From the IMG/VR virus record IMGVR_UViG_3300032240_001991, positions 262,659-326,658 of that record: a stretch of DNA of 64,000 nt; one strand, given 5' to 3'. Shown piece after piece: positions 1,900 to 43,624 of the stretch. Below the pieces are notes generated by a model. That model saw only the letters and a program-made list of their open reading frames with translations. It had not been told where the DNA came from and did not search any database. Each line of letters starts with the position of its first letter. Within the stretch, counting starts at the first letter, position 1. Position numbers and translations under genes: made by a program.

Positions 1900-2564
1900 C
1901 TTCCACTAGTTAAGCTTTGAATTCTAATCGTATAATCAATTTGTATTAATCTGTTTAATGCTTTCTGTACAGGATGAAAGATAACGTGCGTTAACAATAA
2001 TCCTGTATTCTCGCCTGCAGGATTATAACTCTTAAGTCCTAATTCATCAAAAACAAAGGTTCCGGATGAATCTGTAACATTAGCATCAAATGCTGGTTGT
2101 CCTTGAGGTTCTCCAAAGTCTAGTAAGCAACTTACTAATAGATCTGAGTAGTATGTGCCAGCTACGTGTCTTACTTCCATAAAATTTCTTGAAGGATCAA
2201 GATCGTAAGGATTATTTGCATCAATAACTTTATAATATGTTTGATTATATAGAGATGCATTACTACCTACATTATTGGGTGTAAGGTATGTAATAATTCC
2301 TGTAGGATCAATTCTACTACCACCGTTGCCAAACGCCATTTCAGAGATAAAATTTTGACCTATATTACCAACTCCGCTTGCTAATGCGATAGAAAAATTT
2401 TCATAATGAATGGCGTTTCTTTTATCTACGTATACTTCTTTGGTTGTTGGATCAAATATTTTAATATGTCCCTGAAGGCGAATAGACCCTGTTTCATTAG
2501 GGTCTTTATTATTTTGACGGTTTTGTGTATTTTCAATCATTTTAGTACTCTTGATATTATCCAT
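1896..2564 (-). CDS. Hypothetical virion/baseplate-associated protein (222 aa)
   Basis: Lies within the baseplate operon, has its own late-promoter box, and is beta-rich (GHIKIFD...DKRNAIHYEN). Confidence 0.6.
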   Translation of the reverse strand: MDNIKSTKMIENTQNRQNNKDPNETGSIRLQGHIKIFDPTTKEVYVDKRNAIHYENFSIALASGVGNIGQNFISEMAFGNGGSRIDPTGIITYLTPNNVGSNASLYNQTYYKVIDANNPYDLDPSRNFMEVRHVAGTYYSDLLVSCLLDFGEPQGQPAFDANVTDSSGTFVFDELGLKSYNPAGENTGLLLTHVIFHPVQKALNRLIQIDYTIRIQSLTSGS

Positions 2565-5500
2565 AGTAATATTTATCCGGTAGCGTTGCCTGTTTATCTC
2601 TCAAGAACTGAGCTATCTTTCCAGTGTCGTCAATTAAAGGAGTATTGTTTAATTCGTAAAAATTTGTACTCGCAATTCTTTGCACTATCTCAATTCTAAC
2701 ACCAGTTGAGGTAGAAAGAGTAGGTAAATTCAACACTAGTGTTGCAGTACTCCATTGTCCTACTGTAACCACATTAGTTAGAGTAAACTGCGGTTCAACC
2801 CATCTTACGCCAGTAAAACTATAGCCGTTGGTAGCTGTAGAGCTTTCTGATTTAGAGGCGGTGTACGACCAAATTTCATTGGTTGAAGTTACAAGATAGG
2901 CAGTTCCAATAACAGTTGTTGGAGGAAGGTCATATTGTGTAGCAACTGTTGATCTGTTTAGTGTATACGCAGGAGTATCATAAGAAACTGTAATATCGTG
3001 TTGATAAAATCCAGTTTTTCTTAGAGGTGTGCCACCGTATAGAACTGTAATTTGATTCGTTGCAGTAACAAATCCCGTAGTTGTATTCAATGATAGTGCA
3101 GAAATAGTATAACTCGTAGCTCCTGTAGCTGTCATTATTGAAGTAACCGTTGTAATTTCTCTAAATGGCGTATGCGATAGATATAGATTTTGGCGTGCTC
3201 CTTGATCTATAACTGAGGTTCCAATCGCATATACTGATTTTGCTCCAGTTCCTAAAGTAGCTCTTGTAAGATTTCCTAATACATTTTCATTAACTGATCT
3301 ATATTCAATACGTTCTCCTCCAATAAAAATTACACCTGGTATTTTAAGTGCTAGGTTTGGCAGTGCTAGTTTTCCAGCATCAGCAACTGTGATTATTTTA
3401 TCTGTTGGATAGAGAGGTTCTGCCAATACTGTTGAGCTATCTTTTGATAATCTTAAGAATTCGGTTCTGTTTAGCATGTCTCTAAACATTCTGTAACCGA
3501 TTGTGTTTCCTACTGACGTATCGTACATGCTCATTATTGTTACTATATCTGAAGGATTGTAAGGGTACGAATCTCTTAAAACTATCGTAACACGGTCAGC
3601 GTCTACATAAAAATCAATACCTTTAACAAGAGGTTTACGGTTTACAGTTACCCAAACATAGTTATTATTAAAAATTGGTCTACTTACTTCGTAACGGCGT
3701 GATCCTCTTCCTTGGAAAGTTTCTAACTCTATTAACGGCTCTTTTTTAATACCATCCTCAACTGTTATGTTGTTAATTGTAATAATTCTCATAATCTTTG
3801 TATAAGTAAAATCTGCCGACGGTCTAACAACAATTGTATTCCTTGATTCATTAAAGTAGTAATCACTAAATTCGTGATTTGTGATTGCTATTACATCATT
3901 AAGCTGTAGCAATCCTACTCTAAATTTAACTTTATTTTCAACAGAGTTAACTACATAATCTGTTAAAGGAATCATGCGTAACCCATTTACATATACATCT
4001 AACGAACTTAAGCCAAACGAGTTAGGCGGATATGAATTATTTGGATCTATTGAAAATTTAAGATCTACACCAGTGAATAAGTGATATGATGTATTAGGTG
4101 GTATTAAGATTCTACTATCAACTTCTACAATAGCTTGCGAATCCGCAGACCAGTTATCGTTTAGAGGATAGAATAAATCCCACTCAACTCTTGCAGGATC
4201 ATTATTAAAAATAGATTGTTCTCTCACAGCACTATACGGTCTGTTTGTTCCAAAGAATACCCACGACTGCAATACATTTGTAATAGCAGGGTTAACTCCG
4301 GTTACAGTTAGCAATCCTTGTCCTAGTGTATATTGAGATGGTAATAGTTCTTGTCCGTTTAGTGTTGCATATATTGTGTTATACTCAGCGTTAACTCCTA
4401 CACTAACACTTATTGTGCTAGTATTTGAAAGTGCGGTATATCCAGAACTGACATAATCGTATCCTCCTACTCCAATAACAGATACTCCTACCAGTCCTGT
4501 TGTTGTTTGGGTTCCTATTACAATAGTACTGTTAACAAGATCAAACTCATAGTCTACACCGGGTACTAATAATTCGTTGTTAAAGGACACAATAGCAGAC
4601 GCAGTTGTTGGCGGTACTGTCAATAATCTCAGTACTGTAGTCTGTGTTGTTTGTGTAATCTCACCAAAAGTTTCAGAAACAACTGGAGCTCCTGTTTGTG
4701 GATCTCGTGCATAAACACTCATACCCAAGCTTTCGTGTATTTCTCCCTTAATCATCTCCTCGGGAGCATGACTAATGTTAGGAGATATAAACCCTTCACC
4801 GTCGACAATTATATCTTCTGGATTTAATCCCGAAGCAAGTGTATAAGCTAAGTCGCCGCCGTCTAATATTGTATCTAAAACTCCAGGGACCATATTAAAT
4901 TCCCAGAATTCAATCAATGTTCCTAGGCCAACAGTACTAATAGTTGAAGTACTAAATGTAACTAGTTGACTAGCTGTGTTAACACTTACTACAGTAACAA
5001 TAGGATCTACAAACTTGTTATAAGGAGTAGACGTACTAACTGTATTAATACGTAATCCTGGGTATATTCCTGCTAAGTTATCTAACATTAATGTATCTGT
5101 ACCTGTAACGGCTACAGAAATTACACTAGCAGTTGTATAATAATACACATCATCGCCGTATAGAGACTGACCAAACGGTGTTAATCCCCAATTTGTACTA
5201 TAATCAAACATTAGCCCTTGTTTCTGTGCAGCTGGATATTCTACACCTGTCATTAATTGTGCAGGATCAACGCCTGGCATATTAATAGAAGGTTGATAAT
5301 AACTATAAATTCTATCAACTGCAGAATATAAGTTAATATTTTTATTATAAGTTATTTGTATAACTTTTCCTTGCGCTGGAGCAGAGGTTAAGACTAAATC
5401 AGAAAATAGTTTTTTATAACTATAACCAAACCCAGATGATGTTTTTCTATAAGTTTCAATATTATAATCAGTAGCTAGAACCCGTACCCCGCCTAATGTT

Positions 5501-8500
5501 ATGTTAATATTAGCCTTTTTATTTTCTGCAGCCCATCCTAATGTAAATCTAAATGTTTCTCCGTCACAGATAAAACTTTCTGTAACAGTAGAAGTATTAA
5601 TTTGCTGATTAGAGCTAATACGATCAAATTTCATTTCAACAGTATTGTTTCTAACTTTACCGTTAATCATAACCGGATAGGCTTTAGCAGTAACTAGTTC
5701 AGTTGAACCCCCGCCTACAATTATAACGCTTGGAGTTTGAAGGTATCCGCTGCCACCATTAGTAACTACAACTCCAGTAACCTTACCGAGAGAAATTCTT
5801 GCTTCTGCTGTTGCACCTGAGCCAGTGTCTCCTAGGGCTGGTATAATCTCTACTGTAGGAACCGAAGTATAACCAGCACCCGGCTTTTCTACAATTATAC
5901 TACCAACAGAGAGTTTGTAGTTGTCTGTCCACGATTTCCAAGGATAGACACCTGATAATTCGTCTCCTGGATTGACTGTTAAAAATTGATCAGTATCTCT
6001 ATCATAGTATGCTGGAGAATCAAAATCAGTAATATAAGAGTTTGAAGGTTCAAGTAAGTTATAGTTAACTTGATAATTTCTTATCTTAGTATGATAAGGT
6101 TTAACTTCTTCTATGTACTGCTCGTAATATTGACTGTTTTGGAATTTAAAAACAGGACGTTGATCTAATGTTCCTGCAAGATTCCTTACATTAATAAACG
6201 CTGTCTTAAATGCCCAATCTACAAATTTCTGTTCACTCATTGCATATCTTACTGCTTTAAAGAATAAGTGATTCCAGTAAACTTTTAAAGAACCTATAAA
6301 AATATCTTCTTTAATTGCCTTTAAGATATTAATTAACTCCATTTCTGGTGTTTGATCGTATAATGTTTGATCGTATGTGAAGTGGTAATCAAAGTTATAC
6401 CAATTGTTAGTTATATTCCATAAGTTATCTTTAAACTTAATAGTTCCGTTTTCATTAACCATTAGATTATATTTGTCAGTGTAGTCTCCTGCTGACGACA
6501 CTTTCTGTAGAATAATGTATCTTCCGTTGCCTTGATTTTTAACTTTAACGTAATCACCGTTATTGACTGTTATCTCGGCTAATTGATAAGTTTCTTCTAC
6601 AGTCTCAGCTAATGGCTTTAGGCTATCAAAGTCTTGACTTACCCAGTTTATGTAATCCCAATACTGAGTAGTGTCAAAGTCTTGCGTAAAGACTTTGACC
6701 CAAGATTTTCCTTGCCATTCGTATTTTGCCCAACGATTGTTACTATTTTCGTCAGTTTTTACAATAACTGTATATGGTCTAACTTTAAGTTCTGGTGCTT
6801 TTAAGTATCCCTTTCCTGAATTTTTAATAGTAGCCGCAGTAACTCGGCCGTATTGATTTATTACTAGATCAATTTCTGCATCTGAAGTATCGTTTACAAC
6901 GGTTACTAGCGGTCCTGCCCATGATGTTGCCGTGCTTCCTGTATAGGTAACAGGCAATAACGGTGCATATCCTGTACCAGAATTAACAATGTTAATTGTT
7001 GTAATAGTACCAGTTGTAGAGCTAATTGAACAAGTTAATTTTGCTTGTACTAGATCAGCTGTTTTAATAGAACTTAAATCTCCGTAGCTATCTACAATTT
7101 GATCATATTCTCTAGAATATACATCAGGAATCTCTCTCTTAGAGTTTAAATTTTTAAAATTTACCTGATCCGTTATCAAATATCCTGCTACTACGCCGTT
7201 AACATAATCAATAACGTTACGTAGAGCTTGGTTTCTATCAACAAACATACCCTGTCTTGGTCTAACTTCAATTCCATACTTTACTCGATTGCTTAAAGAT
7301 GGATCAGGTACTAAGTTACCTAAACTATCTCTTCCTACTAAGCTATCTAATAGCTTTTTATCAAGCATTTCTGTAGGCATGTTGGCAGAATTGCCTTCAC
7401 CTAACAACAGCCATTCTGTATGTCGAGTAACTGAATTGTTTAGAGTATCTTTTGAAATATTAAGATAAATTTGATTTCCAACAAGAGTATTCTTAACATT
7501 AGCAACTGCTATTGCATTTGGTGCTAATATTGAAACAAACTTTGAACCGTAACTAGCAGGATCAAAGATTAAGCTTGCTACGGTACTTGCAGGAATCTTT
7601 CTTCCCTTTGCATTAGGTAACAATACTTTATTTTTTACCCAGTAAAAATATACATTAGTAGCCTGACCAGTTGACGGATTGTAATATTGTTTGATGCTCA
7701 TTACACTATTATCTGGGTACTTAGGTTGTCCGCTAATACCTTTTGATAGCCCGTCAGTAGTATCTGCTAATGCACTCCATTGACTAGGCAAATACTCTGT
7801 TTGTACCCATTCGTAAACATCAATACTTGCACCAGGGAATAGAGTTCCCCAAGAATTCTTTCGATATTCTAAATCGCTCTGTTCATACCAAACATACTTG
7901 ACTGTGGACAGATCCCACCATAATTCTCCAACACGATCTTCAATCCAACTAGTCTTAGTATTAACTACAACTCCTTGAGTTCCAACACTATAAGTTGCAG
8001 GATCAAACGCTGTTTTATATCTAATTTCCTGATCTGCTAATCCTGAAATTTTTCCTTTAACTGGATCAATAATATCGAGATAATCTACAAGTTGTTCAGA
8101 TTCTGTATTAACAGTAACTGATCTTTTGATCTTAGTTAAGTCAATTAAATCTTCTTGCTGTCTAAATATTGACCAACATGTTTGAGAAGCATCAATTACA
8201 TTGTACTGAAAAACTGCACCTAAAGTTACAAAATTATTAGAAATTATCCCCAAAGTATCAGGCGCGCCTATGAAAATATTTCCGTTGTTAACAGCAATAG
8301 ATTTTCCGTAATTATTTCCGCCGTATAACTCTCCGTTAAGGATAGTTAAAGAATTTGCATCAAATAATTCTGTTGCATAAACAAAATATTTGTTTTTTCT
8401 TTCATATGTGTAAACTGTTCCTGAATTATTAATATAATCAGTAAATCTAGTTGATAATCCATCAAACACTGTACCGTCATTAAACGTTAAGGAGTTTTCC

Positions 8501-11500
8501 TGTATACCGCTTAAGGAAATAATAACTTTTTTAGCATCAACAGTTGTTTTTAATTCTGTTCCAAAATTTAAATTGTTATTTTTTAACGGATTATGAATAG
8601 TTTGTACCAATGAATAAGATGTTGCTGTACTTACATATTCGTAAACATAAACACATCCTGGTCCATAGTTATCGTTAATCAAAAACGGCGACGACGCAAA
8701 CAAATATCCACCATCGTCAGACATAGAAACTGATGTACCAAACTGATCACCTATTGTTCCTGTTGGAGGCGTGATAGTCTGTAATAACGAATATGACGAT
8801 GTACCGGTTGAATACTGGTAAATGTAAACAACCCCTGTTCCGGTAGACATTGCAGGATTTGCAATCGCTAAGATAGTACCGTCAATATTTCCTGCTAACG
8901 AGCAGTTAACTGTCGATGTTCCTAAAGATATTGGAGGCATTGGTACCGTAATTGCAGTTGTTGAATTAACTGTTAACGTATAAGGGAACACTACTCCTAA
9001 TGTAGGAGCAGAAACAACCAATGCCTTCCCACCTGTAGTAAATTGTGTTTTAGCTACAAATATATCACTACCGTATCTAGATGCTGTGCTAGTGTTTAAC
9101 ACAGAGAGTGTTTTCTCTTCTCCTGTTGCTGGAATAATAGTTGAAATTTGTACTCTATCTACTGCAGGTGCACCGGCTACAATAACTTGATATTCAGTGT
9201 CGTATGCTAGTCCTTTTCCAAATTCAGTAGGTATAGTGATAACGTCAATTCCAGAAGCCACCATATTAAGTGTGTAACTAGTAATTGGATAATGGGTTCC
9301 GTTAAGTAACCCTAAAACAAATACTCGACCGTGTCCAGAACTTGAGAAATAATCCGGAGCGGATATTATAAGCTTATCTGCATCCTCTTGAGTTGCAATA
9401 TTGTATCCGTATCGTTGACCCGGATGATTTACACCACTAAGTATTTCTGTTGAAGTAGAATAGTTATGATTCTTCTTATATACTGTCCACGGAGACCAAT
9501 CATATGTTGCATCACCGGTATCAGTCCAGATTAGTTCGTTATCTGCAAAATCAATTTGATCCTGTAGTGCAACTGTATCATCAAAAGATTTAACTCTTAC
9601 ACTAATAAATTTGAACAACAATGCCTGTGTAGTTGCCGGCGAAACAGTGGCTAATGTTGAATTCACAGAAAAAGAAGTTAACGAAGGTATTTCAATAATT
9701 TCATATATTCCGTCAGTTCCGTTATCTAAACCATAAACTGAAACAATGTCTCCTACATTTAATTTATGAAAAATATCTGTATAGAAAGTTAATTTAACAG
9801 CAGGGATATCTATGTCTGACCCAATTACTTTAATCTGTTGTTTTGAGTAACGGTAGACGTCCCAATCTCCATTAGGTTTAAATCCTAACCATACAGTGTT
9901 ACCATCTTGCAAGTTTCCTGCATTTGCAACATCAAACAAGCTTTGTTTGTTGTACGCTGTTGCAGTTATGTCATCTGATCTAACATATCCTGCTGTTGGC
10001 AATAATAGATTATTATTTTTATATGTAGACGATGTGTATGTTAAAAATACATTATTAGAAGAATAATCATAATTTTTAATTGTTACATCATTAGGAGTAA
10101 CGTAAGAGATAACATCATTAGCTGTCTTAGGAGCAACATCAACAAACTTAATAATTTGATTATTTTCTATAAAATCAGATTCTCTAAGTGGTAATTCAAT
10201 TTCGTTATAAGAAATAAAATTGCCGTAAGAGCCTACTCTAAATGCCCATTCTTCGTCAAATTCAATTTGACCATTTAAATTATGTATACTTGCTTTAGAT
10301 AGTTTTGATATTGAATTTGCTGTTCCTTTTTCTCTTATAAATCCTTGATAGAATTTATATTGAGCAATAGGATCTACTATAATGTTTGTAAGATAACCTC
10401 TTGGTGTATAACCGGTTAAATGTTGGGCCATTTTTTGTTGGCCAATGTCAAAGTTATCTATATCTAAACTATAAAAATCTTCAAATTGATTAATTTTATA
10501 ATCAAAATTAGGTAACAACTGCGCAATAGGAGAAGACCCTAATAAATTCCATTTTGTGAAATTAAAATTAGATGTTCCTGTAATATTTTCATTTGCAGAA
10601 TAATATTTTCCAGAATATTTTACAACACTAGAAATATCATAATCTTTATTTGCTTGCCAAGCTTCAATAGTTACATCGTCGTAAACAAATCCAGGACTTA
10701 AGAAATCACCATTCCAGTCTCCTGTAATGAATCCTGAAATTTTCATTCTAGCCTGACGATAACCTGTTTGTGTGTCATAGACTACATCTCCAAACATACT
10801 TGAATTTGCCATAACAATTGCATGTTCTTTCTGTATGAGATTTAATCTAGCAAAATATAAACCTGCAGGAGTATCTTCGGCACTTATTTTACAAATGCCA
10901 TTTTCTCTACTTAAACTAAAGTTTTTTGGAGGAAACGGAGTTCCGTTTGCTGTTAATAAACTATAATCGTAAAAACTATTAAGTACATTATCAACAACAG
11001 CATCTGTAAATTTGTATTGTATTTTTCCTGAAAAAGGACTTAGTGTAATTACTGAGCCGTTAGACCAATTTTGAGTAGTCCAATATAAAAATTCTTTTCC
11101 TGAAAAATTCCAATCTAGTACTTGCTCTAAATCTGAATTATATTCGTTAAAAATAAATCCTTGATTAGTTAGATATTTCCCGTATCCAACAATTAAATCG
11201 TAAACTTCTTGTGTTGTTGAATATTGTGTTCCGTAAGGAATAATCGTTTGATTTTGATCAAAATCTTTAGTGATCGATACCGTTGCTCCGCCTATTGTTG
11301 GTAAGTTTGCTAGTTTGATATAAGCAGTAACATCAAAAGAGGACCCAGAATTGGTACTAGTTGCAACAGAATAATAAGAATTTTCATACTTTACATACTG
11401 ACCTGCTTGATAGAATGTATTTTCTGTCCAGGTTAGTACTGGCGGAGATTTTCCTCCTACTGATATAGATGCGTCGTTATTTCTATGTAAAGGAGCATTT

Positions 11501-14500
11501 ATTGTAAAGAATAGATCTTTTTTATCGTAACCCTTAACTAAAAATTTTCCATTTTTCTTTTCAACAATTATACCAGAAATTGAAACAAACTTAACCGGAT
11601 TACTTACATTAAAATGTAAAGCGTAGTCTTCGTTAGGTAGTAAAACTCCTGGACTTACTGTATTTGGGCTAACTGAATCTATAGTAATCTCTAACTTATC
11701 TTTACTTAAAAATCCACCTGCTTTATAAAACAAATTAAAGTTAACTAATGATAAATCTTGTTTCAGTGCTGCTAGATAATCTAAAGACCTCTTTTTACCA
11801 GATTCAATCACCATCACACTATAACCAGATGAAAGAACAGTATTTCCATTACTGTCTATATCACTATTAAGATAAACAATTGAAGGATTTAAAAATAAAC
11901 TATTTTTACCGTACCTGTATTGTCCATCTACATTTTTAACTAGTCTAATAGGGTCAAACATTTTTGCAGCGTACGATGCTGGCTTAGATAGTGCTAAAAT
12001 TATTTGCACTGCATACGGCCATATACTGCTACGTCTCCATGCAGTTTCAGCAGGACCATGATCTCCAAAAGACCAATCTTGATCTGGATTTAATATATTT
12101 TCATTCTCAGCAATACTACCCCAGAATCGTAAGTCAATCAATTGACCACTATCATCAACTGGAATTATTTTACTTAACCCTGTTCTAACATATGTAGGAT
12201 CTACTCCAGCACGTTCTCCGTAACGAATTAGTCCTGCTTCTAAATCTTCCCATAAGTTTAGGTTTCCAGAAGTATAAGGTGCAGGACCATATTCTGATTC
12301 CCACCAAGATGGTTTAATACTAAATCCTAACATTTCCCAAGGATGTGTATTAGGGCGATCAGTATCAAAGTAAAATTTGTAGATACCTCTCCAATTTCCA
12401 GGAACTACAGAATTAAAAAAGTAATCTTGAGTAGATTTATAGTTATAAGTTTTATGGTTGTCTACGTTATAGTCAACATTTGACGAATAATCTATTCCGT
12501 AACTACTGGTCCATTTAATAAAATCTCCTTGTACAATATTATAAATTTTATTATAGGAGTTTTTATTATCTCGAAATACTCCCGGAAGTATGTCATTGAT
12601 ATTAATTAAATCAGGATCATATGTTACTTTTATATTATTGAACACTCTTCTTTCGTATTCTAAAAGTGCTAGGTCTCTAAAATCGTAATTGCCAATTGCG
12701 GCATTTGCAACTGTTGTATATGCCAGCGTAATACTACCATCGTGGCCTTGTATTACCATGTGGGCATTTACTGCATATGATTCGTCTTTATAAATCATAG
12801 GCACATATTTTGGATACAATCCTAATTTGCTAGGAGTTGGCGGAACGTAGGATCCTACGGTGGTAATATAATCAACCACCGTTATTATGTCACCCCGTGT
12901 TAAAGTTGCCGATATTACAACTACAGGGTCTACCAAATCAAAAGAATAATCAACTCCGTATACTAACAATGAACCGTTTAGGTATATCAATACTGATCTA
13001 GTTGAAAGCTGTGTAATATCAAATGTTGAAATTAAAGGATATCTAACATTTCTAGCATCTGTAACTGTGTACTTTCTAGTAACATTATTAGTACCATATC
13101 CTAGCATATCACTTTGAGAATACGGAAACGTGTAATTTTTATTTTTAATAATAGAACTTAACGCTTGATCTAAAACTCCGCTAGGTGATAAAGACGCATC
13201 AGATTGGGTGATAAATTTTATTAAATTTAACTTAAATTGATAATAATCATTTGCAGTACTACGTGTTGCATTAATTAAATTATGTTCAATGTCAGTTATA
13301 AACAGTTGTGCAAACGACATTGGATTATATGATGTAATCATTCGTGTTCCGTATTTTGTAATAAACGGAAGACTCTTTAGATTACTTACACCAGGGAACA
13401 CACCAACAAAATTTGGGTCTCGATTAACCATTGTTTGAACATGATCACTTAATTCACTAAGAGTAAATTGAGAAATTTGTTCGTTCAGCGGATTGTTAGA
13501 TGAATTTAAAGGAAATTCATATATACCGTTTTCGTTTGGTGACGAAGCGGTATAACATTTAATTAAAACATTTGTTACACTAGTAAACGGTGTAACAAAT
13601 TGAACATTTAAATTTGTTTTATCTATGACCAATGTATAATCTACATCTAACATTAACTTTACATTATTAGAAAATACTTCTATAGTTAGATCTGTAATTA
13701 ATGCGGCATTATCAAAAACAGTGATAGGTATTAAATTTCCAGTTGATACAACTTGAAATTGTTGCACCGGCATCTGATACGGCATTCCTTCTTCCCATAC
13801 GTTCTTATAAGAATATCCAGTATCCTTATTAATTCGTAAGAAAGTCTTAGATGTAGAAACATCGGTTACTGTATTAGTACCTAATAGAGAAATATTACTT
13901 GTATTGAAATAATTTTCAAACAAATAGGATCCTTCAATCCCAACATTTTTATAGTTTAACGGAAACCCTAAAACAGGATCAGCTATACCTGTACCTATTG
14001 AATATCCAAATAACTTATTTCCTAAAAAGATTGCATTGTAATAAGTTTTATCGCTATAACTATGTCCAGTTTCATCAAATAGGTCAAAAAGTGGTGCTTG
14101 GTTTAGTACAGTTCTTTGTTGAGAAAGAACCCATTCTAATCCATTAAACCAAAATTCCTTTCCTTGTCCCTTAGTTCCTAATAATATTACTGTACTATTA
14201 CCAAAAATTGGTTCTATTATCTCGGCTAGATTAATCTTTTCAACACCGTTAATTAAGCTTAACCCTACTTGAAATATTTTTCCACGAACTAGTGGATCAG
14301 GGTCTGCATTAAAAATAATGCGTTGGCCAGGTTCTAATGCAACTCCGTCTACAGTATAACTTGTAGAACCTTCAATACTTGAAAATACATCGCTAGTTAC
14401 TTGGTCAATTAAATCAACTGGATCTAAGCTGTTATTTCCAAAATTGTAGAGTTGTATATCTGCTTCAAATTCAACAATAGGACGTCTTGCTCTTAAATTC

Positions 14501-19151: not shown

Positions 19152-19205
19152 AACTCAAATGTTCTCAATGATACCGTTATTTATTGGTTTTAATATATTG
19201 GTATT

Positions 19206-19646
19206 TTATTGAGGTACCAATCCAATCTCTTTATCAAAAGCCAATCTCATAGCAATAGTTTGATCAGAACCAATAACCTGTAGCGTTAACTCTAAAAGCA
19301 TGCCGTATTCTTGCTCATCAATAAGAATTTGTATAGGTATTACCCTAGGGTCTGACCTGCATATTCTATTAATATCGTCTGCTATAGCCTGTTTTACATC
19401 TTCAGTAAAAGGTTCAAAAATTAAAGACCAAATAATAGTACCATATTTTGGCAGCATTACCCGCTCACCTTGTTTAGTATTGAACTGATTTAGGAAGTCC
19501 TGTTTTACTAACTCAAAATCATAAAGTGAAGTAGACCCTAATGCGCCTACATTAATAGAGCTATATCCTTTGTAAAACTGACTTTCTTGCTTAGTATAGC
19601 TTGTATTATACTGGGCAGGATTTAATTCAATATTTTTATATGGCAT
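19206..19646 (-). CDS. gp25: Baseplate wedge subunit, gp25-like
   Basis: LVKQDFLNQFNTKQGERVMLPKYGTIIWSLIFEP...DPRV is the GPW/gp25 family signature. Confidence 0.85.
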   Translation of the reverse strand: MPYKNIELNPAQYNTSYTKQESQFYKGYSSINVGALGSTSLYDFELVKQDFLNQFNTKQGERVMLPKYGTIIWSLIFEPFTEDVKQAIADDINRICRSDPRVIPIQILIDEQEYGMLLELTLQVIGSDQTIAMRLAFDKEIGLVPQ

Positions 19647-19653
19647 AAAGTAT

Positions 19654-21183
19654 TTATTTGCTGGCTGGATTAGCTGTAGGCTGCGTTATATCGGTTGCTG
19701 CAGGAGCAAATTTTTGAGGGTCAATATTTTCATGCTGATCCCACGGTTCATGTGTTGGCACTCGTTGAAGAATAGTACTAATTCCGTCAGACTTATAAAA
19801 TTTACCATTAGTCCAACCAGCATCAACTGTTCTATTTGGTACAGTAAACAAGATTAACGGATCTGGCTGAGTCGCTATTTCTGCTGCTGTAGCTGCTTCT
19901 GCAGAAGGCCCATTAAAATGTATTTTTGCTGCCGTTGCAATTAAACTGCCAACGGAGCCTAAATGTGTAGAACCACCTGTGCTTATTCTTACATGACTTT
20001 CGCCCGAGAGATCCATACCCGCACCTGCAGTTTCTGAGATCCCTTTAGTAACAGATAGATTGTAATCTTCGCCTACTGCTAATTTTAATGTTTTTCCTAC
20101 AGTTTCATCCTTAGTATTAGTAACTAATATTTTAGCAGAATCTCCTACAATTAAATTATAATTTCCTGTAATGTTTGTTTCCATCTTTCCGCTAGCACGA
20201 AAATTAATATTTCTTCCTGCTTCAATATTAACATCTCTATCTGCCCTAAAATTAAAATCTGTTTCTGTGTGAATGCTTACGCTATCATGTGCAAAAATAT
20301 CTATCTTGCCATTTGATGTTAATTCTATCCATGCAGTTCCTTGGCTATTAGCGATATAAATTAAATCACTACTATTATGTAATAATATCTGGTGTCCGGT
20401 TCGTGTTCTAATACGAACTAATTCATTTTGTCCAGATTCGTCACCATCGTCCATTACAAATTGAGAACCGCCTAATCTACTAACAGGAGTAATAACTTTA
20501 TTTTTATATCCAATTGCGGCTTTTTTTCCGTTAGGATTAATAGGCCCAGGAGTGCTAATGCCAAAGACTTTGCTTGGTACTTCTCTTCTTGCAGAACTTG
20601 ACGTTACTCCTCGGATATTATCAAGTAATAGGCCCTGGGCCAACAATCTATCAGCAAAAGGATGAACAGGTTTTTTTTGAGAATTAGGACTTAATAAATC
20701 TTTTGCATTTCTTTTAAGAAATTCTGCTACAGGAAGATTTTTAGTACCATATTTTAATTCTTCTTCAGGCGTCAAATGAGAATTCTGACTAGCTGCTAGC
20801 CCGGGAATCATGTGATTTTGGAACTGATCTGGAAGACAACCTATCCAATAACCTAGAGGATGTCCTTCAATGAACATTACTAAAACTTTAGTTCCTACGT
20901 CAGGAGGTACCATCCAGAACCCATAGCTCTTTTGTACATCATTAAACTTTGTAGGATCAGTTCCTTCAAAATCTACGTTTGTAACTCCATAAAAAGGACT
21001 TACGTATTGAACAGGGAAAACTTCGTTTTCTAAGTTTGCATTATTAGTAAAGCCTCTTTCAATTGCAACTTCAACAGCTCCCATATACGTAGGATCTTTT
21101 AAATTTGTAATTCTGCCAATATAGGTACCGGGTTTTGGTGTCCCTCCTCTAAATTGACTTCTAGTTCGTTGTTGTATTGGCAT
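19654..21183 (-). CDS. gp5: Baseplate central spike, gp5/VgrG-like, no lysozyme domain
   Basis: OB-fold N-terminus (YIGRITNLKDPTYMGAVEV...GFWMVPPDVGTKVLVMF), beta-helix region (RIRTRTGHQILLHN...WIELTSNGKIDIF) and C-terminal VPTHEPW. Confidence 0.75.
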   Translation of the reverse strand: MPIQQRTRSQFRGGTPKPGTYIGRITNLKDPTYMGAVEVAIERGFTNNANLENEVFPVQYVSPFYGVTNVDFEGTDPTKFNDVQKSYGFWMVPPDVGTKVLVMFIEGHPLGYWIGCLPDQFQNHMIPGLAASQNSHLTPEEELKYGTKNLPVAEFLKRNAKDLLSPNSQKKPVHPFADRLLAQGLLLDNIRGVTSSSARREVPSKVFGISTPGPINPNGKKAAIGYKNKVITPVSRLGGSQFVMDDGDESGQNELVRIRTRTGHQILLHNSSDLIYIANSQGTAWIELTSNGKIDIFAHDSVSIHTETDFNFRADRDVNIEAGRNINFRASGKMETNITGNYNLIVGDSAKILVTNTKDETVGKTLKLAVGEDYNLSVTKGISETAGAGMDLSGESHVRISTGGSTHLGSVGSLIATAAKIHFNGPSAEAATAAEIATQPDPLILFTVPNRTVDAGWTNGKFYKSDGISTILQRVPTHEPWDQHENIDPQKFAPAATDITQPTANPASK

Positions 21184-26109: not shown

Positions 26110-27027
26110 ATGTTTATAAGAATGACAACAGTAACAACATCAGGAAAAAAAGTAAAATACTTAAACAATAGAGATTTATTAGCAGAGATACATAAAAGCA
26201 AATGTAGTTTTTCTAGTTTTACCAAACCAGAATATAACCAATACGATGTTATTTTAACTGACCTAGATAAAATAAACATTAGAACTATTGCAGATGCCAA
26301 AAGAAATCGTGCTAAAAGAATTGGATTAGAAACATTTAATGCCGCAAGAGCAGCAGGCGATAAAAAAATTAAACTAATAGAGTGTACTCCAGACTACACT
26401 GAAATTAAAAAAGGTGACATTGTCATTAGGATAATGACCTTTGATCATATTCCGCTTGCACCGGGCAGAAAAAAGACTACTAAAACTCGAGCAGATTCCC
26501 ACGAAAAAATTAATTTTCCTCCGTTCCAACATTGGAAGTTTAACGAAGCTGGAGAACTAGAATGCGTAGGCAAAAGTCACTGGAAAGGTGGTTTAGAAAA
26601 AGGCAAGTTTAGCAAAGATCACGGACGGATTACTGAAGAACTTGGCAAGATGTTTATTAAATTAAGTGAACGCTACGCACAGCGCAGTAACTGGCGCGGC
26701 TATACATATGTTGACGAAATGCGGGGGCAGGCTATATTACAGTTAAGTCAAATCGGATTGCAATTTGACGAGTCAAAATCAGAAAACCCGTTTGCTTATT
26801 ATACTGCCGCAGTAACTAATTCTTTTACTAGAATTTTAAACTTAGAAAAGAAAAGCCAAAACATTCGTGACGATCTACTTGAAGTGCACGGACTAACGCC
26901 TAGCCTAACTCGTCAATCTAAGGACGAATTTGCAGACGAAGTTGCCAAGCAAGCAGAAATCTATAAAAATACTAGATTACCAAAGAGTCAAGATACTGAC
27001 TTTTTTGAAGAAGAAAGCGACGAATAA
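26110..27027 (+). CDS. gp55: Late-transcription sigma factor, T4 gp55-like, with N-terminal extension
   Basis: YLNNRDLLAEI...ITEELGKMFIKLSERYAQRSNWRGYTYVDEMRGQAILQLSQIGLQFDESKSENPFAYYT; immediately upstream of gp47/gp46 as in T4. Confidence 0.85.
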   Translation: MFIRMTTVTTSGKKVKYLNNRDLLAEIHKSKCSFSSFTKPEYNQYDVILTDLDKINIRTIADAKRNRAKRIGLETFNAARAAGDKKIKLIECTPDYTEIKKGDIVIRIMTFDHIPLAPGRKKTTKTRADSHEKINFPPFQHWKFNEAGELECVGKSHWKGGLEKGKFSKDHGRITEELGKMFIKLSERYAQRSNWRGYTYVDEMRGQAILQLSQIGLQFDESKSENPFAYYTAAVTNSFTRILNLEKKSQNIRDDLLEVHGLTPSLTRQSKDEFADEVAKQAEIYKNTRLPKSQDTDFFEEESDE

Positions 27028-30742: not shown

Positions 30743-30764
30743 CATCAAGGCACATTAAACAGCA

Positions 30765-31176: not shown

Positions 31177-31178
31177 AG

Positions 31179-31186
31179 TATAAATA
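31179..31186 (+). promoter_or_regulatory. T4-type late promoter TATAAATA
   Basis: Exact T4 late consensus, 26 nt upstream of ATG 31213. Confidence 0.75.
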
Positions 31187-31212
31187 AAACATACTATTAG
31201 GATTTTATAGTC

Positions 31213-32073: not shown

Positions 32074-32306
32074 AAGTATGGTAATCCGGACTTATTAGTT
32101 GTTTCAAGATTTTCTTCAATGATCTTGGAGATTATTTCTCTGCTTTCGTAATCAAGCTGAAAGGCTTCATCAAAAGTCAAAGATCCTCGCATATGCCAGC
32201 ACATTCTAAACAGTGCTTTCTTTAAATCTTTGCTTTCGTTTTCTAGGCCCTTAACGAGGTCTTCAATTTCAGGTATGGTTAGAGTTAAGAGCCTTGCCCG
32301 AAAAAA
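32070..32306 (-). CDS. Unannotated gp51-like ORF, probably expressed by -1 frameshift from the gp26-like gene
   Basis: Hand translation: FFRARLLTLTIPEIEDLVKGLENESKDLKKALFRMCWHMRGSLTFDEAFQLDYESREIISKIIEENLETTNKSGLPYF*. There is no ATG/GTG/TTG until MCWH, and the frame opens just before the T TTT TTC site. Confidence 0.75.
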   Translation of the reverse strand, partial: FFRARLLTLTIPEIEDLVKGLENESKDLKKALFRMCWHMRGSLTFDEAFQLDYESREIISKIIEENLETTNKSGLPYF

Positions 32307-33172: not shown

Positions 33173-33182
33173 ATGTAACTCC

Positions 33183-33226
33183 AATAAATATGGTTAATAA
33201 ATACTATTACTAACTTGGGTATTTAT
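33183..33226. promoter_or_regulatory. Face-to-face late promoter boxes
   Basis: AATAAATA 33183-33190 (+), ATAAATA 33197-33203 (+) and ATAAATA 33220-33226 (-). Confidence 0.6.
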
Positions 33227-33254
33227 CTAGGTATAAAATGGCGAAAATTATAAT

Positions 33255-35897: not shown

Positions 35898-35903
35898 TAA
35901 CAT

Positions 35904-37634: not shown

Positions 37635-37650
37635 TTGAATAAATAACTTT

Positions 37651-37902
37651 ATGTTACTAAACGAATTCATTTATTTTAACGACAACGAACGGGAGATGCC
37701 TGATAAAAATCGTTATGATCCCAAGCATGACACTGGTGTTATTAAAATGAGTGATCTGCGTAAAAGCAGACTAACGCTGCGTATGCTCAATGACCTACGA
37801 AAATCAAGTGAAGCTCACGAAAGAGAAAAGAAAGAAGATCTAGAGTTAGTTAGACAGATGTATGCAGCACCAAAACCTGAAGTTGGACCTGGGCTAATTT
37901 AA
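37651..37902 (+). CDS. Small head-associated hypothetical protein
   Basis: Lies between portal and core genes; N-terminus MLLNEF; directly preceded by a late box. Confidence 0.6.
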   Translation: MLLNEFIYFNDNEREMPDKNRYDPKHDTGVIKMSDLRKSRLTLRMLNDLRKSSEAHEREKKEDLELVRQMYAAPKPEVGPGLI

Positions 37903-38033
37903 GGTTTTTGAAAAATTATCTAATCTAAGGCCAAAACGGCTCGTTTTTGGCCTATTTCGCATAAGTATTCCACAATGGTTGTAAATAATAGTACAGCCTT
38001 GCCAAGTTTTAAAAAAAATAAGGAGAACCCGCA

Positions 38034-39029
38034 ATGTCTAACAAGTTTGAAAAACTACTAGACTATTTGGTAAACGAAGAAATGGAAAAAGCTAATGAAC
38101 TTTTCCACGAAATCGTTGTAGAAAAGTCTAGAACAATTTACGAAACTCTAATTGCTGAAGAAGCAGAAGATGAAGAAATGGATGAATCTAAAATGTGCTC
38201 ATCTTGCCACAAGGCACCATGTGAGTGCGATGAATCTGTAGAAGAAGATTCAGAAGAAGAAGATGAATCCGTAGAAGAAGGAGTTTACGACGAAGAAGAA
38301 AGCATGATGGAAATTGGAGGAGATTCTTCCGATGACTTCGTTGACAGCGTTGTTGATCGCGGTGCTATGGATTCCGACGGTGCTATGGATGCTGGCCAAC
38401 GTATGGGTGGCGGCATGGACGGCATGGATTCTGATGACGAAGAACCAGCTACAAAAGACGACATTCAGCGAGTTGAAGATGCTCTAGAGCAACTAACTGC
38501 AGAATTTGAAGCTCTATTAGCTGATAAAACTGAAGATGACTCAGAATTTGACGACGAAGATGACATGGACATGGACATGGACTTTGACAGCGAAGACGAC
38601 GGCGAAGAAGACAGCGAAGAAGACGATGAAGAAGACGCTGACGAATTTGACGACGAGGAAGATGCTGACGAATCATTTGTTCGTGAATATCGCGAAGTTG
38701 TTGCAAAAGGCACCTATGACAAGTTTGGAAAGAACTCAGAAGACAGTGTTAACGCTAAGAGTGCAGTAAATGCTAACCCAAGCGATCGTCCAGTAACCAA
38801 AGCAAATGCTAAAAACATTGCTCAGAGTAATGGCGGCGAAGGCAAAATGGACGGCACAAAGACCAATATGGGCGCAAATGCTAAGAGTCTAGCAGGTAGT
38901 GTTAAAGGCAAGTTTACCGACGGCAGCACATTAAATGTTGACGGTAAGCAGACTAAGGGCTACGACAAGAGCACTAAGAAGCCATCAAAGGAATCAAACG
39001 TTAATACTAAAGACGTTCTTCCTAAGTAA
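38034..39029 (+). CDS. Acidic prohead core protein (gp67/gp68-like position)
   Basis: Extremely Asp/Glu-rich; lies between portal and prohead protease; AAGGAG SD and GTAAATA box at 37981. Confidence 0.65.
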   Translation: MSNKFEKLLDYLVNEEMEKANELFHEIVVEKSRTIYETLIAEEAEDEEMDESKMCSSCHKAPCECDESVEEDSEEEDESVEEGVYDEEESMMEIGGDSSDDFVDSVVDRGAMDSDGAMDAGQRMGGGMDGMDSDDEEPATKDDIQRVEDALEQLTAEFEALLADKTEDDSEFDDEDDMDMDMDFDSEDDGEEDSEEDDEEDADEFDDEEDADESFVREYREVVAKGTYDKFGKNSEDSVNAKSAVNANPSDRPVTKANAKNIAQSNGGEGKMDGTKTNMGANAKSLAGSVKGKFTDGSTLNVDGKQTKGYDKSTKKPSKESNVNTKDVLPK

Positions 39030-39038
39030 GGAACAGGG

Positions 39039-39671: not shown

Positions 39672-39684
39672 CCGTAAGGAGATA

Positions 39685-40785: not shown

Positions 40786-40809
40786 TTTTTACTATTCAAG
40801 GAGACATTA

Positions 40810-41985: not shown

Positions 41986-42011
41986 TAGAATTACTTGCAA
42001 TAGCATACAGG

Positions 42012-42040
42012 AAACCCGCCGCAAGGCGGGTTTTCTTTTG
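42012..42040 (+). terminator. Rho-independent terminator after the major capsid gene
   Basis: AAACCCGCC-GCAA-GGCGGGTTT followed by TCTTTT. Confidence 0.9.
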
Positions 42041-42056
42041 TCCAAATAAATAGTTA

Positions 42057-42278
42057 ATGCGAATTAACGAGATATTAAACGAATTAGGTGTTGGAGGAGG
42101 CAGGTCTTTTAAAGGCAGTCCTTGTACCAAAGATTGTTCAGGACATTCAGCCGGATATACCTGGGCTAAAAAGAAAGGCGTTAAAAATAGAAATCAATGT
42201 CCTGTTAAACCATCACATCAAAGTTTTTCAAACGGTTGCAGAATCGCAGGCGATGAAGAAAGCGAAGACACAGAATAA
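42057..42278 (+). CDS. Small Cys-rich protein, possible head-packaged protein
   Basis: MRINEILNE leader, then CTKDCSGHSAGYTWA...C...C; late box 4 nt upstream. Confidence 0.6.
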   Translation: MRINEILNELGVGGGRSFKGSPCTKDCSGHSAGYTWAKKKGVKNRNQCPVKPSHQSFSNGCRIAGDEESEDTE

Positions 42279-42361
42279 ATAGCTTGTCAGCCTACATAGG
42301 GTAGGTTTATGCAGAACCTAACTGCGTATCGACATAGAACGTCAACATAAGGAGAAAACAA

Positions 42362-43048
42362 ATGGGACGTCCAATTAAGAAGAAATATTTTGGATTTGGA
42401 AATCCAGACGGTGTAGGTGGAGAAGCGTTTGCATCTCTCGTTGTAACTAACACCGCAACAAACGCAGGATACAGTACAACTACAGCAGTTACATGGGTTG
42501 CATCAAGCCCGCAGTTAGTAGGAGGCACTCCTGCTGCTGGTACCGCTGCTGTTTCTTTTGTTACTGGTCAAGGCCGTATACAATCCTTAGGCATCACTAC
42601 TGCGGGTACAGGTTATACCAGCACCGCTAGTGTAACACTAACTTTTACACCTGCTCGAGTAGGCGGCACTGCTGCAACATTTGTACTAAACTTATCATCT
42701 GCTGTAACAAATACTATAGCTGCAAATGCATGGGTTCCAGTATCAGGAACTCAGTCATTAATAGCAGAGATTTTAAAGCAGAAAGCTTCACATCGTTATC
42801 GTGTAGCAACTTCAGAAGGTACTGGAGTTTGCCAACTAGTTGCTAGAGCGCCGGCAGCTGGCGGCGAAATGACGATTATTGCAACTGATAGTGCAAGTAA
42901 TCAATACTATGTTACTAAATTAACTGCACGCAAGGCTGTAGTTTATCAGAAGTCAGGTTCAGGATATCAGTTTACAAACGGTACTGAAGTAGGCTGGAAC
43001 TTAACCGCAGCACAAGCTAACGTCTCAGTTCTAGTAGCATCTAACTAA
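42362..43048 (+). CDS. Virion structural protein (head decoration/fibre-like)
   Basis: Thr/Ala/Gly-rich beta composition, ITTAGTGYT motif, strong AAGGAG SD, and a terminator downstream. Confidence 0.55.
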   Translation: MGRPIKKKYFGFGNPDGVGGEAFASLVVTNTATNAGYSTTTAVTWVASSPQLVGGTPAAGTAAVSFVTGQGRIQSLGITTAGTGYTSTASVTLTFTPARVGGTAATFVLNLSSAVTNTIAANAWVPVSGTQSLIAEILKQKASHRYRVATSEGTGVCQLVARAPAAGGEMTIIATDSASNQYYVTKLTARKAVVYQKSGSGYQFTNGTEVGWNLTAAQANVSVLVASN

Positions 43049-43067
43049 GATTAATATCTTAGAAAAG

Positions 43068-43094
43068 ATAGCCGCTTTGGCGGCTATTTTTTTG
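43068..43094 (+). terminator. Rho-independent terminator
   Basis: ATAGCCGC-TTTG-GCGGCTAT followed by a T run. Confidence 0.85.
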
Positions 43095-43108
43095 GTTAAA
43101 TAATCTAT

Positions 43109-43624
43109 ATGGCTACTGACTGGTTTTATTGTAACAACGTAACTCAAACCTATGAGGTTATTGAACATATACCTTGGGTTGATACTGATGATTATTTTCC
43201 TATAAAACATGCTAACGGAATGTTTTTAAGTTTATCTGCACCTTTACTGCATATAGCTAATTCTGTAGTTAATGACGTAAAAATGAAAACATATTTTTTA
43301 AATCTTTCAGATTTTCAAATTAAAGGACTCCCTGATATTATCTCAGGAGTTGAAGTTGAGATTAATATGAACAGGGGCGGACGAATTACAGACGAAACAA
43401 TACAGCTTATGTACAATGGAGCGTTTATTGGCGAAAATCGAGCTAACTTTGATTTATCTCCTGATAAACTTTATGGCAGTAACACTGACCTTTGGGGCAC
43501 AGTGTTAACTTCTGCAATTTTATCAAGTAGCACCTTTGGAATAGGGGTCAGATTTCAAAGCCATCCAAGCTGGCCTCATAGTGAATATCCTAGAATTGAT
43601 TACATCAGGATAAGAGTTCACTAA
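43109..43624 (+). CDS. Hypothetical late protein (171 aa)
   Basis: Full ORF with a TTAAATA box 6 nt upstream; beta-rich. Confidence 0.6.
   Translation: MATDWFYCNNVTQTYEVIEHIPWVDTDDYFPIKHANGMFLSLSAPLLHIANSVVNDVKMKTYFLNLSDFQIKGLPDIISGVEVEINMNRGGRITDETIQLMYNGAFIGENRANFDLSPDKLYGSNTDLWGTVLTSAILSSSTFGIGVRFQSHPSWPHSEYPRIDYIRIRVH

What the first reader, a model, noticed from the sequence alone, without database searches (positions are those of the whole stretch)
2564..43111. Late promoter box placed 4-6 nt before start codons: probable leaderless late mRNAs
Seen: NTAAATA occurs upstream of about 15 structural genes. In five cases it ends only 4-6 nt before the ATG with no SD in between: 2570-2576(-) to ATG 2564, 19651-19657(-) to 19646, 37639-37645 to 37651, 42046-42052 to 42057, and 43096-43102 to 43109. 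Other genes (31213, 38034, 42362, 43653, 45940, 60398, 62809) have longer leaders, most with an SD. Established: T4 gp55 promoters are a lone TATAAATA box with initiation a few nt downstream. Inference: transcription starts at or next to the A of ATG, so the phage uses two translation-initiation modes, perhaps to tune stoichiometry.
Basis: partly seen in the sequence, partly recalled or inferred. Interest (0 to 1): 0.6.

Follow-up and report, generated by a model that had tools for sequence, protein, structure and literature searches.

The report
Late promoters fused to start codons
In this uncultured jumbo phage about one gene in ten has the T4-type late promoter box placed so that transcription should begin on the A of the ATG, which predicts late messages with no leader and no ribosome-binding site; many relatives keep this layout, but no RNA data yet prove it.

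Summary
All five sites are as described. TAAATA is four-fold depleted in the window yet is the most enriched hexamer upstream of gene starts in the whole 326.7-kb genome.

Box-to-start distances are bimodal. 35 genes have the box 4-8 nt before the ATG (peak 5) and none has a Shine-Dalgarno (SD). 58 genes have it 13-35 nt away, and 62% of those have an SD.

In T4 the box spans -13 to -6, so a 5-nt spacer puts the A of ATG exactly at +1. A gp55 homologue lies in the window.

Orthologous genes in dozens of uncultured relatives keep box, 4-5 nt and ATG while the flanks diverge. Some sites have a terminator immediately upstream of the box.

T4, KVP40, three cyanophages and the cultured Rak2-like phages lack the close spacing; Pelagibacter phage HTVC008M has it.

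ATAAATA as a late promoter is already published for CBB and GAP32. The fusion to start codons is not, as far as I could find.

No transcript 5' ends are available, so leaderless initiation remains an inference. The stoichiometry idea is not supported.

The parts
26110..27027 (+). gp55-like late sigma factor gene (305 aa)
   Evidence: phrog_12791 'sigma factor for late transcription', E 4e-88. Matches T4 gene 55 with E 2.8e-7 and 35% identity over residues 157-249. No Pfam hit.
2562..2575 (-). Box TAAATA (2575-2570), 5 nt, ATG (2564) of a 222-aa protein (phrog_11259). The box lies inside the 3' end of the 4396-aa upstream gene.
   Evidence: Of 73 unique orthologous sites, 34 keep the close box without SD and 31 have the box 15-22 nt upstream, often with AGGA.
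19644..19656 (-). Box TAAATA (19656-19651), 4 nt, ATG (19646) of the gp25-like baseplate wedge protein. The TAA of the box is the stop codon of the upstream gene.
   Evidence: PF04965. Of 47 unique orthologous sites, 31 have the close box and 14 have an SD with no box.
37640..37653 (+). Box, 5 nt, ATG of an 83-aa protein (phrog_13986) just after the portal gene
   Evidence: 45 of 46 unique orthologous sites (39-68% aa identity) keep the box 4-7 nt before the ATG, 35 of them at 5 nt.
42009..42040 (+). Intrinsic terminator-like hairpin plus U-run ending the capsid operon, immediately before the box at 42047
   Evidence: Fold energy -22.4 kcal/mol, z -5.0. The hairpin is also present in 2 of 2 orthologous loci.
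42047..42059 (+). Box, 4 nt, ATG of a 73-aa protein
43062..43094 (+). Intrinsic terminator-like hairpin plus T-run immediately before the box at 43097
   Evidence: Fold energy -19.2 kcal/mol, z -4.6. Nine of the ten orthologous loci listed show a hairpin of different stem sequence plus a T-run, then (G)GTAAATA, 4-5 nt and ATG.
43097..43111 (+). Box, 6 nt, ATG of a 171-aa protein
   Evidence: 19 of 20 unique orthologous sites are close-box without SD.
37982..38036 (+). Box with a 46-nt leader carrying AAGGAG before the 331-aa gene that opens the capsid operon. The conserved element ACAGCCTTGCC (37993-38003) starts 5 nt after the box.
   Evidence: In 39 of 46 unique orthologous leaders the element follows a box, at 4-7 nt in 33 of them. 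Three listed at 13 nt have a second box 4-6 nt before the element.
42276..42364 (+). Box 42276-42281 (overlapping the stop of the 73-aa gene), followed by a structured 5' leader (Rfam RF02980, 42290-42364) and AAGGAG before ATG 42362
   Evidence: 58.7 bits, gathering 49.9. 13 of 14 orthologous leaders have a box 71-91 nt before the ATG.
43630..43655 (+). Box with a 17-nt gap and a weak SD (AGGA) before ATG 43653
33185..33225 (.). Divergent intergenic region with boxes in both directions: 33185 and 33198 on (+) for gene 33255, and 33225-33220 on (-) for the gene starting at 33172/33184
19178..19183 (-). Box 26 nt before ATG 19151 (1129-aa gene)
31181..31186 (+). The only full TATAAATA in the window (31179-31186), 26 nt before ATG 31213
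45841..45846 (+). Box 93 nt before ATG 45940 (2513-aa gene, SD AGGAG)
60368..60377 (+). Two overlapping boxes 20 and 24 nt before ATG 60398
62758..62763 (+). Box 45 nt before ATG 62809

Best explanation
(A/N)TAAATA is the late promoter of this Rak2-like jumbo myovirus. It is read by host RNA polymerase carrying the phage's gp55-like sigma factor (window 26110-27027).

If T4 geometry holds (box at -13 to -6), transcription begins on the sixth base after the box. About 58 genes then have a short leader of roughly 8-30 nt that carries an SD. About 35 genes (9% of the genome, five of them in the window) have the ATG placed 4-8 nt after the box, most often 5. The transcript then begins on, or 1-3 nt before, the A of AUG.

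Such mRNAs have no SD and would be translated by the leaderless route, in which the ribosome recognises a 5'-terminal AUG.

Shown here: the motif, its distribution, the two spacing classes, SD exclusivity, conservation, and the gp55 homologue. Inferred: the exact start site and the translation mode.
For: 1. Promoter identity.
- TAAATA is the top hexamer upstream of starts, at 15.5-fold.
- It is strongly selected against inside genes on both strands: sense 64 against 188 expected, antisense 54 against 272. That fits a DNA-level signal, not an RNA-level one.
- Functional copies prefer A at the two positions before the box, whereas the other copies prefer T.
- A gp55 homologue is encoded.
- The same motif was proposed as the late promoter in the relatives CBB and GAP32 (PMC5259590).
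- The genes behind it are typical late functions: head-tail adaptor, tail-tube-like, large terminase, endolysin, gp25-like wedge and virion proteins.

2. Geometry.
- The first base of the T4 box is -13, so the box ends at -6 and +1 is the sixth base after it (PMC2988020).
- The spacing peak here is 5 nt.
- Position -1 is a pyrimidine in 28 of 35 close-box genes against 174 of 327 others (p 0.002). It is T in 104 of 131 unique orthologous sites. This fits the usual pyrimidine(-1)/purine(+1) start preference.
- Two independent leader elements begin at the same distance from a box. ACAGCCTTGCC starts 4-7 nt after the box in 33 of 39 orthologous leaders. RF02980 starts 9 nt after the box at 42281.

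3. No alternative route for ribosomes or transcripts.
- 0 of 35 close-box genes have an SD, against 62% of far-box genes and 46% of all genes. 34 of 35 start with ATG.
- Terminator hairpins sit directly upstream of the boxes at 42047 and 43097.
- Seven close-box genes elsewhere in the genome face a divergent neighbour across gaps of only 33-170 nt.

4. Conservation.
- Orthologous sites keep box, 4-5 nt and ATG while flanks and spacers vary: 45 of 46, 19 of 20, 31 of 47 and 34 of 73 unique sites.
- Where the close box is lost, an SD appears instead.
- Between this genome and a 328-kb relative (median protein identity 63%), the class is retained in 14 of 21 close-box orthologue pairs (odds ratio 80, p 8e-13).
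- Five related contigs each show about four-fold more N4-6 than N10-12 spacings.
- Codons 2-4 vary synonymously (ATG CCN TAY AAR in the wedge gene), so translation does start at that ATG.
Against: - No transcript 5' end has been seen. The only public runs holding this DNA are metagenomic DNA from one study.
- No homologue of the T4 co-activator gp33 or clamp gp45 was found on the contig. The sigma is 120 aa longer than gp55, so start-site geometry could differ from T4.
- Sites with a 4-nt spacer need initiation one base closer to the box than in T4.
- Some close boxes overlap the stop codon or 3' end of the upstream gene (19646, 2564). No terminator-like fold precedes the box at 37640 and the 2564 and 19646 boxes overlap the upstream gene, so read-through transcripts and translational coupling could contribute there.
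- The host is unknown, so its capacity for leaderless translation is unknown.
Confidence: 0.72

Rival explanations
1. The boxes are late promoters, but the proteins are made mainly from longer read-through transcripts. Initiation would be SD-independent: termination-reinitiation after the upstream gene, or A/U-rich S1-type loading. The 5'-AUG transcripts would be minor by-products.
For: At 19646 the TAA of the box is the upstream stop codon. At 2564 the genes overlap by 8 nt. At 37651 the portal stop is 16 nt upstream, no terminator intervenes, and many orthologues use the box's TAA as the portal stop.
Against: 25 of the 35 close boxes are fully intergenic and only 4 overlap a stop codon. Terminators precede the boxes at 42047 and 43097, and do so in orthologues too. 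Seven sites have a divergent upstream neighbour. Coupling would not need a specific hexamer at a fixed 4-6 nt, nor a T at -1.
Confidence: 0.13
2. Next to start codons, TAAATA acts in the RNA rather than as a promoter. It would be an operator for a RegA-like translational repressor, or a translation enhancer at a fixed distance from the AUG.
For: A fixed distance to the AUG is what an operator overlapping the initiation region would show. The motif is A/U-rich.
Against: The same hexamer, with the same flanking preference, sits 13-90 nt upstream of SD-led genes and directly after terminators. It is depleted even more on the antisense strand of genes, which an RNA signal would not explain. It matches the T4 late box, and a gp55 homologue is present.
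Confidence: 0.06
3. The ATGs next to the boxes are not the real starts. Transcription begins at or after them, and translation starts at a downstream codon.
For: With sigma-70-like geometry (start 7 nt after the hexamer), 4-5-nt spacers would cut into the ATG.
Against: tblastn alignments to orthologues begin at residue 1 (47 of 50 for the 83-aa gene). The ATG is invariant and codons 2-4 change synonymously in the wedge gene.
Confidence: 0.03
4. Chance co-occurrence in AT-rich intergenic DNA.
For: The genome is 62% A+T, and both motifs are short.
Against: N5 occurs 18 times against 3.7 (Poisson 8e-8). Nine control AT-rich hexamers show no peak. The pattern is replicated in five relatives and at orthologous sites.
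Confidence: 0.01

Closest known systems
Phage T4 late promoters (TATAAATA at -13 to -6, read by gp55 with gp33 and the gp45 clamp)
   Same: A lone A/T box with no -35 element. A gp55-family sigma is encoded. The box sits upstream of virion, packaging and lysis genes. The core TAAATA is identical.
   Different: Only the last six bases are fixed here; the full octamer occurs once in 64 kb. No gp33 or gp45 homologue was found. In T4 itself the close spacing is not enriched, with N4-6 = 12 against N10-12 = 13.
Putative ATAAATA late promoter of Rak2-like jumbo phages CBB and GAP32 (Buttimer et al. 2017, PMC5259590)
   Same: Same phage supergroup (major capsid protein 68% identical), same motif, and the same position before structural genes.
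   Different: In CBB, 121Q, XaC1, the PA5oct-like MIJ3 and Vibrio phage 2.275.O the box lies about 25-55 nt upstream with a strong SD between it and the ATG. The close spacing is not enriched there. The paper does not mention leaderless mRNAs.
Leaderless mRNAs such as lambda cI from PRM (general knowledge, not tested here); ribosome recognition of a 5'-terminal AUG (Brock et al. 2008, cited in PMC5312081)
   Same: The predicted transcript starts at the A of AUG, has no SD, and the start codon is ATG (34 of 35).
   Different: Here it would be a programmed class of about 35 late genes driven by a phage sigma factor, not single regulatory genes. It is unproven at the RNA level.
Pelagibacter myophage HTVC008M
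   Same: The same TAAATA-N5-ATG arrangement: N5 = 14 against about 3 per spacing, and about 10 called genes.
   Different: It is a distant T4-like lineage of 147 kb with a SAR11 host. I did not look for papers on it; none of my leaderless or late-promoter searches returned one.

Membership tests
T4-type late promoter system | A gp55-family sigma factor is encoded by the phage | tested here: met
   Window 26110-27027: phrog_12791, E 4e-88. tblastn hit to T4 gene 55, E 2.8e-7.
T4-type late promoter system | A single -10-like A/T box matching TATAAATA, with no conserved -35 element | tested here: met
   The core TAAATA is fixed and A is preferred at the two positions before it. The 12 positions upstream show no conservation. 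The first two positions of the T4 octamer are relaxed.
T4-type late promoter system | The box precedes late (virion, packaging, lysis) genes | tested here: met
   Portal-adjacent gene, capsid operon, wedge, adaptor, tail-tube-like, large terminase and endolysin.
T4-type late promoter system | Initiation about 6 nt downstream of the box | not testable with these tools
   No RNA run holds this DNA. Indirect support comes from the spacing peak at 5 nt, T at -1, and leader elements starting 4-7 nt after boxes.
T4-type late promoter system | gp33 co-activator and gp45 sliding clamp | tested here: inconclusive
   No hit with Syn9 gp33 or Pfam PF02916 on the contig. gp33 is small and divergent, the PF02916 search passed the cut-off in none of its 14 control genomes, and the contig's CheckV completeness is listed as 36. 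The CBB authors also found neither.
Leaderless mRNA | Transcript 5' end at, or within a few nt of, the start codon | not testable with these tools
   No RNA data.
Leaderless mRNA | No Shine-Dalgarno sequence, and an AUG start | tested here: met
   0 of 35 have an SD and 34 of 35 start with ATG.
Leaderless mRNA | The ORF is really translated from that AUG | tested here: met
   Orthologue alignments start at residue 1. Codons 2-4 vary synonymously. No proteomic evidence.

The most novel reading that the evidence does not exclude
The box-ATG fusion is a transcription-coupled translational gate. ORFs without an SD would be translated only from transcripts that the phage late sigma starts on their AUG, so copies of the same ORF on read-through early or middle transcripts stay silent. 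Orthologous genes toggle between this mode and a short SD leader. The mode has arisen in at least two T4-like lineages: a freshwater jumbo-phage clade and the SAR11 myophage HTVC008M.
Probability: 0.3. Interest if true: 0.75.

Novelty: new variant of a known kind. Interest (0 to 1): 0.6.

Why it matters
T4-type late transcription is a textbook system, and its mRNAs are thought of as SD-led. This would add a whole class of late genes expressed as leaderless mRNAs, including large terminase, a tail-tube-like protein, endolysin and baseplate parts. That would tie translation of those genes directly to use of the late promoter.

It also gives a simple sequence rule, TAAATA-N4-6-ATG without an SD. 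The rule improves start-codon and promoter annotation in a large group of uncultured jumbo phages. The claim can be tested with a purified sigma factor, or in the cultured HTVC008M-Pelagibacter pair.

Tried and rejected
- **Megablast against phages.** The capsid region gave no match. Identity of the phage came from protein searches.
- **Pfam.** No family for the sigma or for four of the five close-box proteins.
- **gp33 and gp45.** Searches of the contig were empty.
- **Is the close spacing a general T4-like or Rak2-like trait?** Rejected. T4, KVP40, S-PM2, Syn9, P-SSM2, CBB, 121Q, XaC1, MIJ3 and Vibrio phage 2.275.O show no excess.
- **Chance, mis-called starts, and stop-codon overlap as general explanations.** Considered and rejected.
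- **Stoichiometry tuning.** Not supported by which genes fall in each class.
- **Literature.** Searches for leaderless late mRNAs in T4-like or jumbo phages found nothing relevant. The PA5oct omics paper reports only sigma-70-like promoters. The phiKZ dRNA-seq study found no leaderless transcripts.

My gene calls come from a simple home-made caller, with Shine-Dalgarno (SD) scored by a motif list. The counts of 35 and 58 genes are therefore approximate.
Full report
**What the window is.**
The window is the last 64 kb of a single 326,658-bp contig. Its proteins identify a T4-related jumbo myovirus of the Rak2/CBB/GAP32/121Q/PA5oct supergroup.
- There is a gp23-type major capsid protein, 68-71% identical to Vibrio phage 2.275.O, GAP32 and CBB.
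- There is also a gp20-type portal, a gp21-type protease and a baseplate hub.
- At 26110-27027 lies a 305-aa 'sigma factor for late transcription'. It matches T4 gene 55 itself, with E 2.8e-7.
- No near-identical GenBank phage was returned.
- Only metagenomic DNA runs of one study hold the sequence.
- An Rfam hit to the 'freshwater-2' RNA hints at a freshwater origin.

**Checking the observation.**
The hexamer TAAATA occurs 31 times in the window against 119 expected, and the T4 octamer TATAAATA once against 10.8. About 20 of the 31 copies lie within 100 nt upstream of about 16 same-strand starts. The motif is therefore rare overall but concentrated before genes.

**Genome-wide picture.**
I called about 390 genes with a simple codon-usage caller that did not use the motif.
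- TAAATA is the single most enriched hexamer in the 45 nt before starts. 93 of its 252 copies lie there, a 15.5-fold excess that ranks above the SD hexamer AAGGAG.
- Inside coding sequence it is depleted on both strands relative to codon-shuffled genes: sense 64 against 188, antisense 54 against 272. This is what selection against spurious promoters predicts. An RNA-level signal would not predict it.
- Copies in front of genes prefer A at the two positions before the hexamer, whereas the remaining copies prefer T.

**Two spacing classes.**
The distance from the end of the box to the start codon is bimodal.
- 35 genes have 3-8 nt (4 nt in 8 genes, 5 nt in 12, 6 nt in 5, 7 nt in 4, 8 nt in 6).
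- The first gene set has no gene at 9-12 nt.
- 58 genes have 13-35 nt.
- None of the 35 close-box genes has an SD (AGGA or better, 3-12 nt from the start). 62% of the far-box genes and 46% of all genes do.
- Without using gene calls, TAAATA-N5-ATG occurs 18 times against a background of 3.7 per spacing (Poisson 8e-8). Nine other AT-rich hexamers, including TATAAT, show no such peak.
- 34 of 35 close-box genes start with ATG.
- The close-box genes include a head-tail adaptor, a tail-tube-like protein, the large terminase, an endolysin, virion proteins and the gp25-like wedge protein. These are classical late functions.

**Geometry.**
The review of T4 late transcription numbers the first base of TATAAATA as -13 (PMC2988020). 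The box therefore ends at -6, and +1 is the sixth base after it. A 5-nt spacer, the modal value here, puts the A of ATG exactly at +1.
- The base before the ATG is a pyrimidine in 28 of 35 close-box genes against 174 of 327 other genes (p 0.002). This matches the usual pyrimidine(-1)/purine(+1) start preference of bacterial RNA polymerase (general knowledge).
- Two unrelated leader elements start at the same distance from a box. The conserved sequence ACAGCCTTGCC in the leader of the capsid-operon gene at 38034 begins 5 nt after the box in the window. It begins 4-7 nt after a box in 33 of 39 unique orthologous leaders.
- The Rfam family RF02980 begins 9 nt after the box at 42276-42281.

**Context that excludes long leaders.**
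- The boxes at 42047 and 43097 are immediately preceded by strong hairpins followed by U-runs (-22.4 and -19.2 kcal/mol, z about -5).
- Elsewhere in the genome, seven close-box genes face a divergently transcribed neighbour across gaps of only 33-170 nt. Others follow terminator-like hairpins or tRNA-like 3' ends.

**Comparative evidence.**
IMG/VR holds many relatives, with capsid protein identity of 75-95%.
- For the 83-aa gene after the portal (37651), 45 of 46 unique orthologous sites keep TAAATA 4-7 nt before the ATG, 35 of them at exactly 5 nt. These proteins are 39-68% identical. The upstream portal codons and the spacer itself are unconserved.
- For 43109, 19 of 20 unique sites are close-box. 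Nine of the ten orthologous loci listed show a hairpin of different stem sequence, then a T-run, box, 4-5 nt and ATG.
- For the wedge gene (19646), 31 of 47 unique sites have the close box, and 14 have an AGGAG-type SD with no box. The two modes are alternatives.
- For 2564, 34 of 73 sites are close-box and 31 carry the box 15-22 nt upstream, often with AGGA.
- Pooled over 131 unique orthologous close-box sites, the spacing is 4 nt (44), 5 nt (72), 6 nt (11) or 7 nt (4). The base at -1 is T in 104.
- Codons 2-4 of the wedge gene vary synonymously (ATG CCN TAY AAR), so the ATG is a real start.
- SD-led genes (capsid, scaffold-like, 38034, 42362) keep AAGGAG or GAGG in all relatives, so the host clearly uses SD.
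- A 328-kb relative shares 242 reciprocal-best orthologues with this genome, at a median identity of 63%. The promoter class is retained there: close-close 14 of 21, odds ratio 80, p 8e-13.
- Five related contigs each show about four times more TAAATA-N4-6-ATG than N10-12.

**Where the arrangement is absent, and where else it occurs.**
- Vibrio phage 2.275.O, CBB, 121Q, XaC1 and the PA5oct-like MIJ3 have TAAATA boxes before structural genes, but 25-55 nt upstream and with strong SDs. None shows an excess of close spacings.
- T4, KVP40, S-PM2, Syn9 and P-SSM2 show none either.
- Pelagibacter myophage HTVC008M does show it: N5 = 14 against about 3, with about ten called genes, typically TAAATA-GTANT-ATG.

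**Literature.**
ATAAATA was already proposed as the late promoter of CBB (35 sites) and GAP32, and was compared to T4 (PMC5259590). I found no paper describing late promoters abutting start codons, or leaderless late mRNAs, in T4-like or Rak2-like phages. phiKZ dRNA-seq found no leaderless phage transcripts. The library is not exhaustive.

**Interpretation.**
The most economical reading is that the box is the gp55-type late promoter. In about 9% of genes the start codon has been placed at the transcription start, giving leaderless or 1-3-nt-leader late mRNAs. Other late genes carry minimal SD leaders.

The main weakness is the complete lack of RNA 5' end data. Lesser ones are:
- no gp33 or gp45 homologue was found;
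- the 4-nt sites need initiation one base closer to the box than in T4;
- a few sites could also use translational coupling.

Proteins expected (from general knowledge) at very different copy numbers share the close-box class, while the capsid protein is SD-led. A more attractive but untested idea is that SD-less ORFs are translated only from transcripts started by the late sigma.

**Verdict.**
- The promoter motif itself is known for the family. Its fusion to start codons appears to be a new variant worth an experimental test.

Noticed in passing
window 42290-42364 (+): Rfam RF02980 'freshwater-2' cis-regulatory RNA (58.7 bits, gathering 49.9). It sits between a late box (42276-42281) and the AAGGAG/ATG of a 228-aa gene of unknown function. 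The leader is conserved, with varying stems, in 14 related phage loci, and 13 of them have a box 71-91 nt before the ATG. This places the orphan motif in late 5' UTRs of jumbo phages.
   Followed up: partly
window 37993-38003 (+): The conserved element ACAGCCTTGCC starts 5 nt after the box at 37982-37987, in the leader of the first capsid-operon gene. It is present 4-7 nt after a box in 33 of 39 orthologous leaders. It is possibly the conserved 5' end of the transcript; its function is unknown.
   Followed up: partly
Pelagibacter phage HTVC008M, NC_020484 (L257-L264): This cultured SAR11 myophage shows the same TAAATA-N5-ATG class (14 against about 3 per spacing), often as TAAATA-GTANT-ATG and in some cases after terminator-like hairpins.
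   Followed up: partly
window 2557-15747 (-), 45940-53481 (+), 53867-57940 (+): Very large ORFs of 4396, 2513 and 1357 aa in the structural region. They were not characterised.
   Followed up: no
whole contig G000:C1: ACGCGT is almost absent: 2 copies counted over both strands, against 15 expected from a Markov-4 model and 83 from base composition. This suggests avoidance of a restriction site. Many TCGGA/TCCGA-containing hexamers are also strongly under-represented.
   Followed up: no
G000:C1 about 193,500-193,580 and 198,190-198,270 (outside the window): Two close-box genes lie directly after sequences that look like tRNA 3' ends (T-arm plus CCA). Late boxes therefore also follow the tRNA cluster. 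Not checked with ARAGORN.
   Followed up: no
G000:C1 50400(-), 51102, 105714, 122452(-), 198275; window 42057: Several close-box ORFs begin with ATG CGN (Met-Arg), three of them ATGCGTAT. They may be paralogues, or this may be a preferred initial transcribed sequence.
   Followed up: no
whole contig: The CheckV completeness shown for this 326.7-kb contig is 36, while its 328-kb relative is rated 92. The estimate looks inconsistent and weakens any 'gene absent' claim.
   Followed up: no
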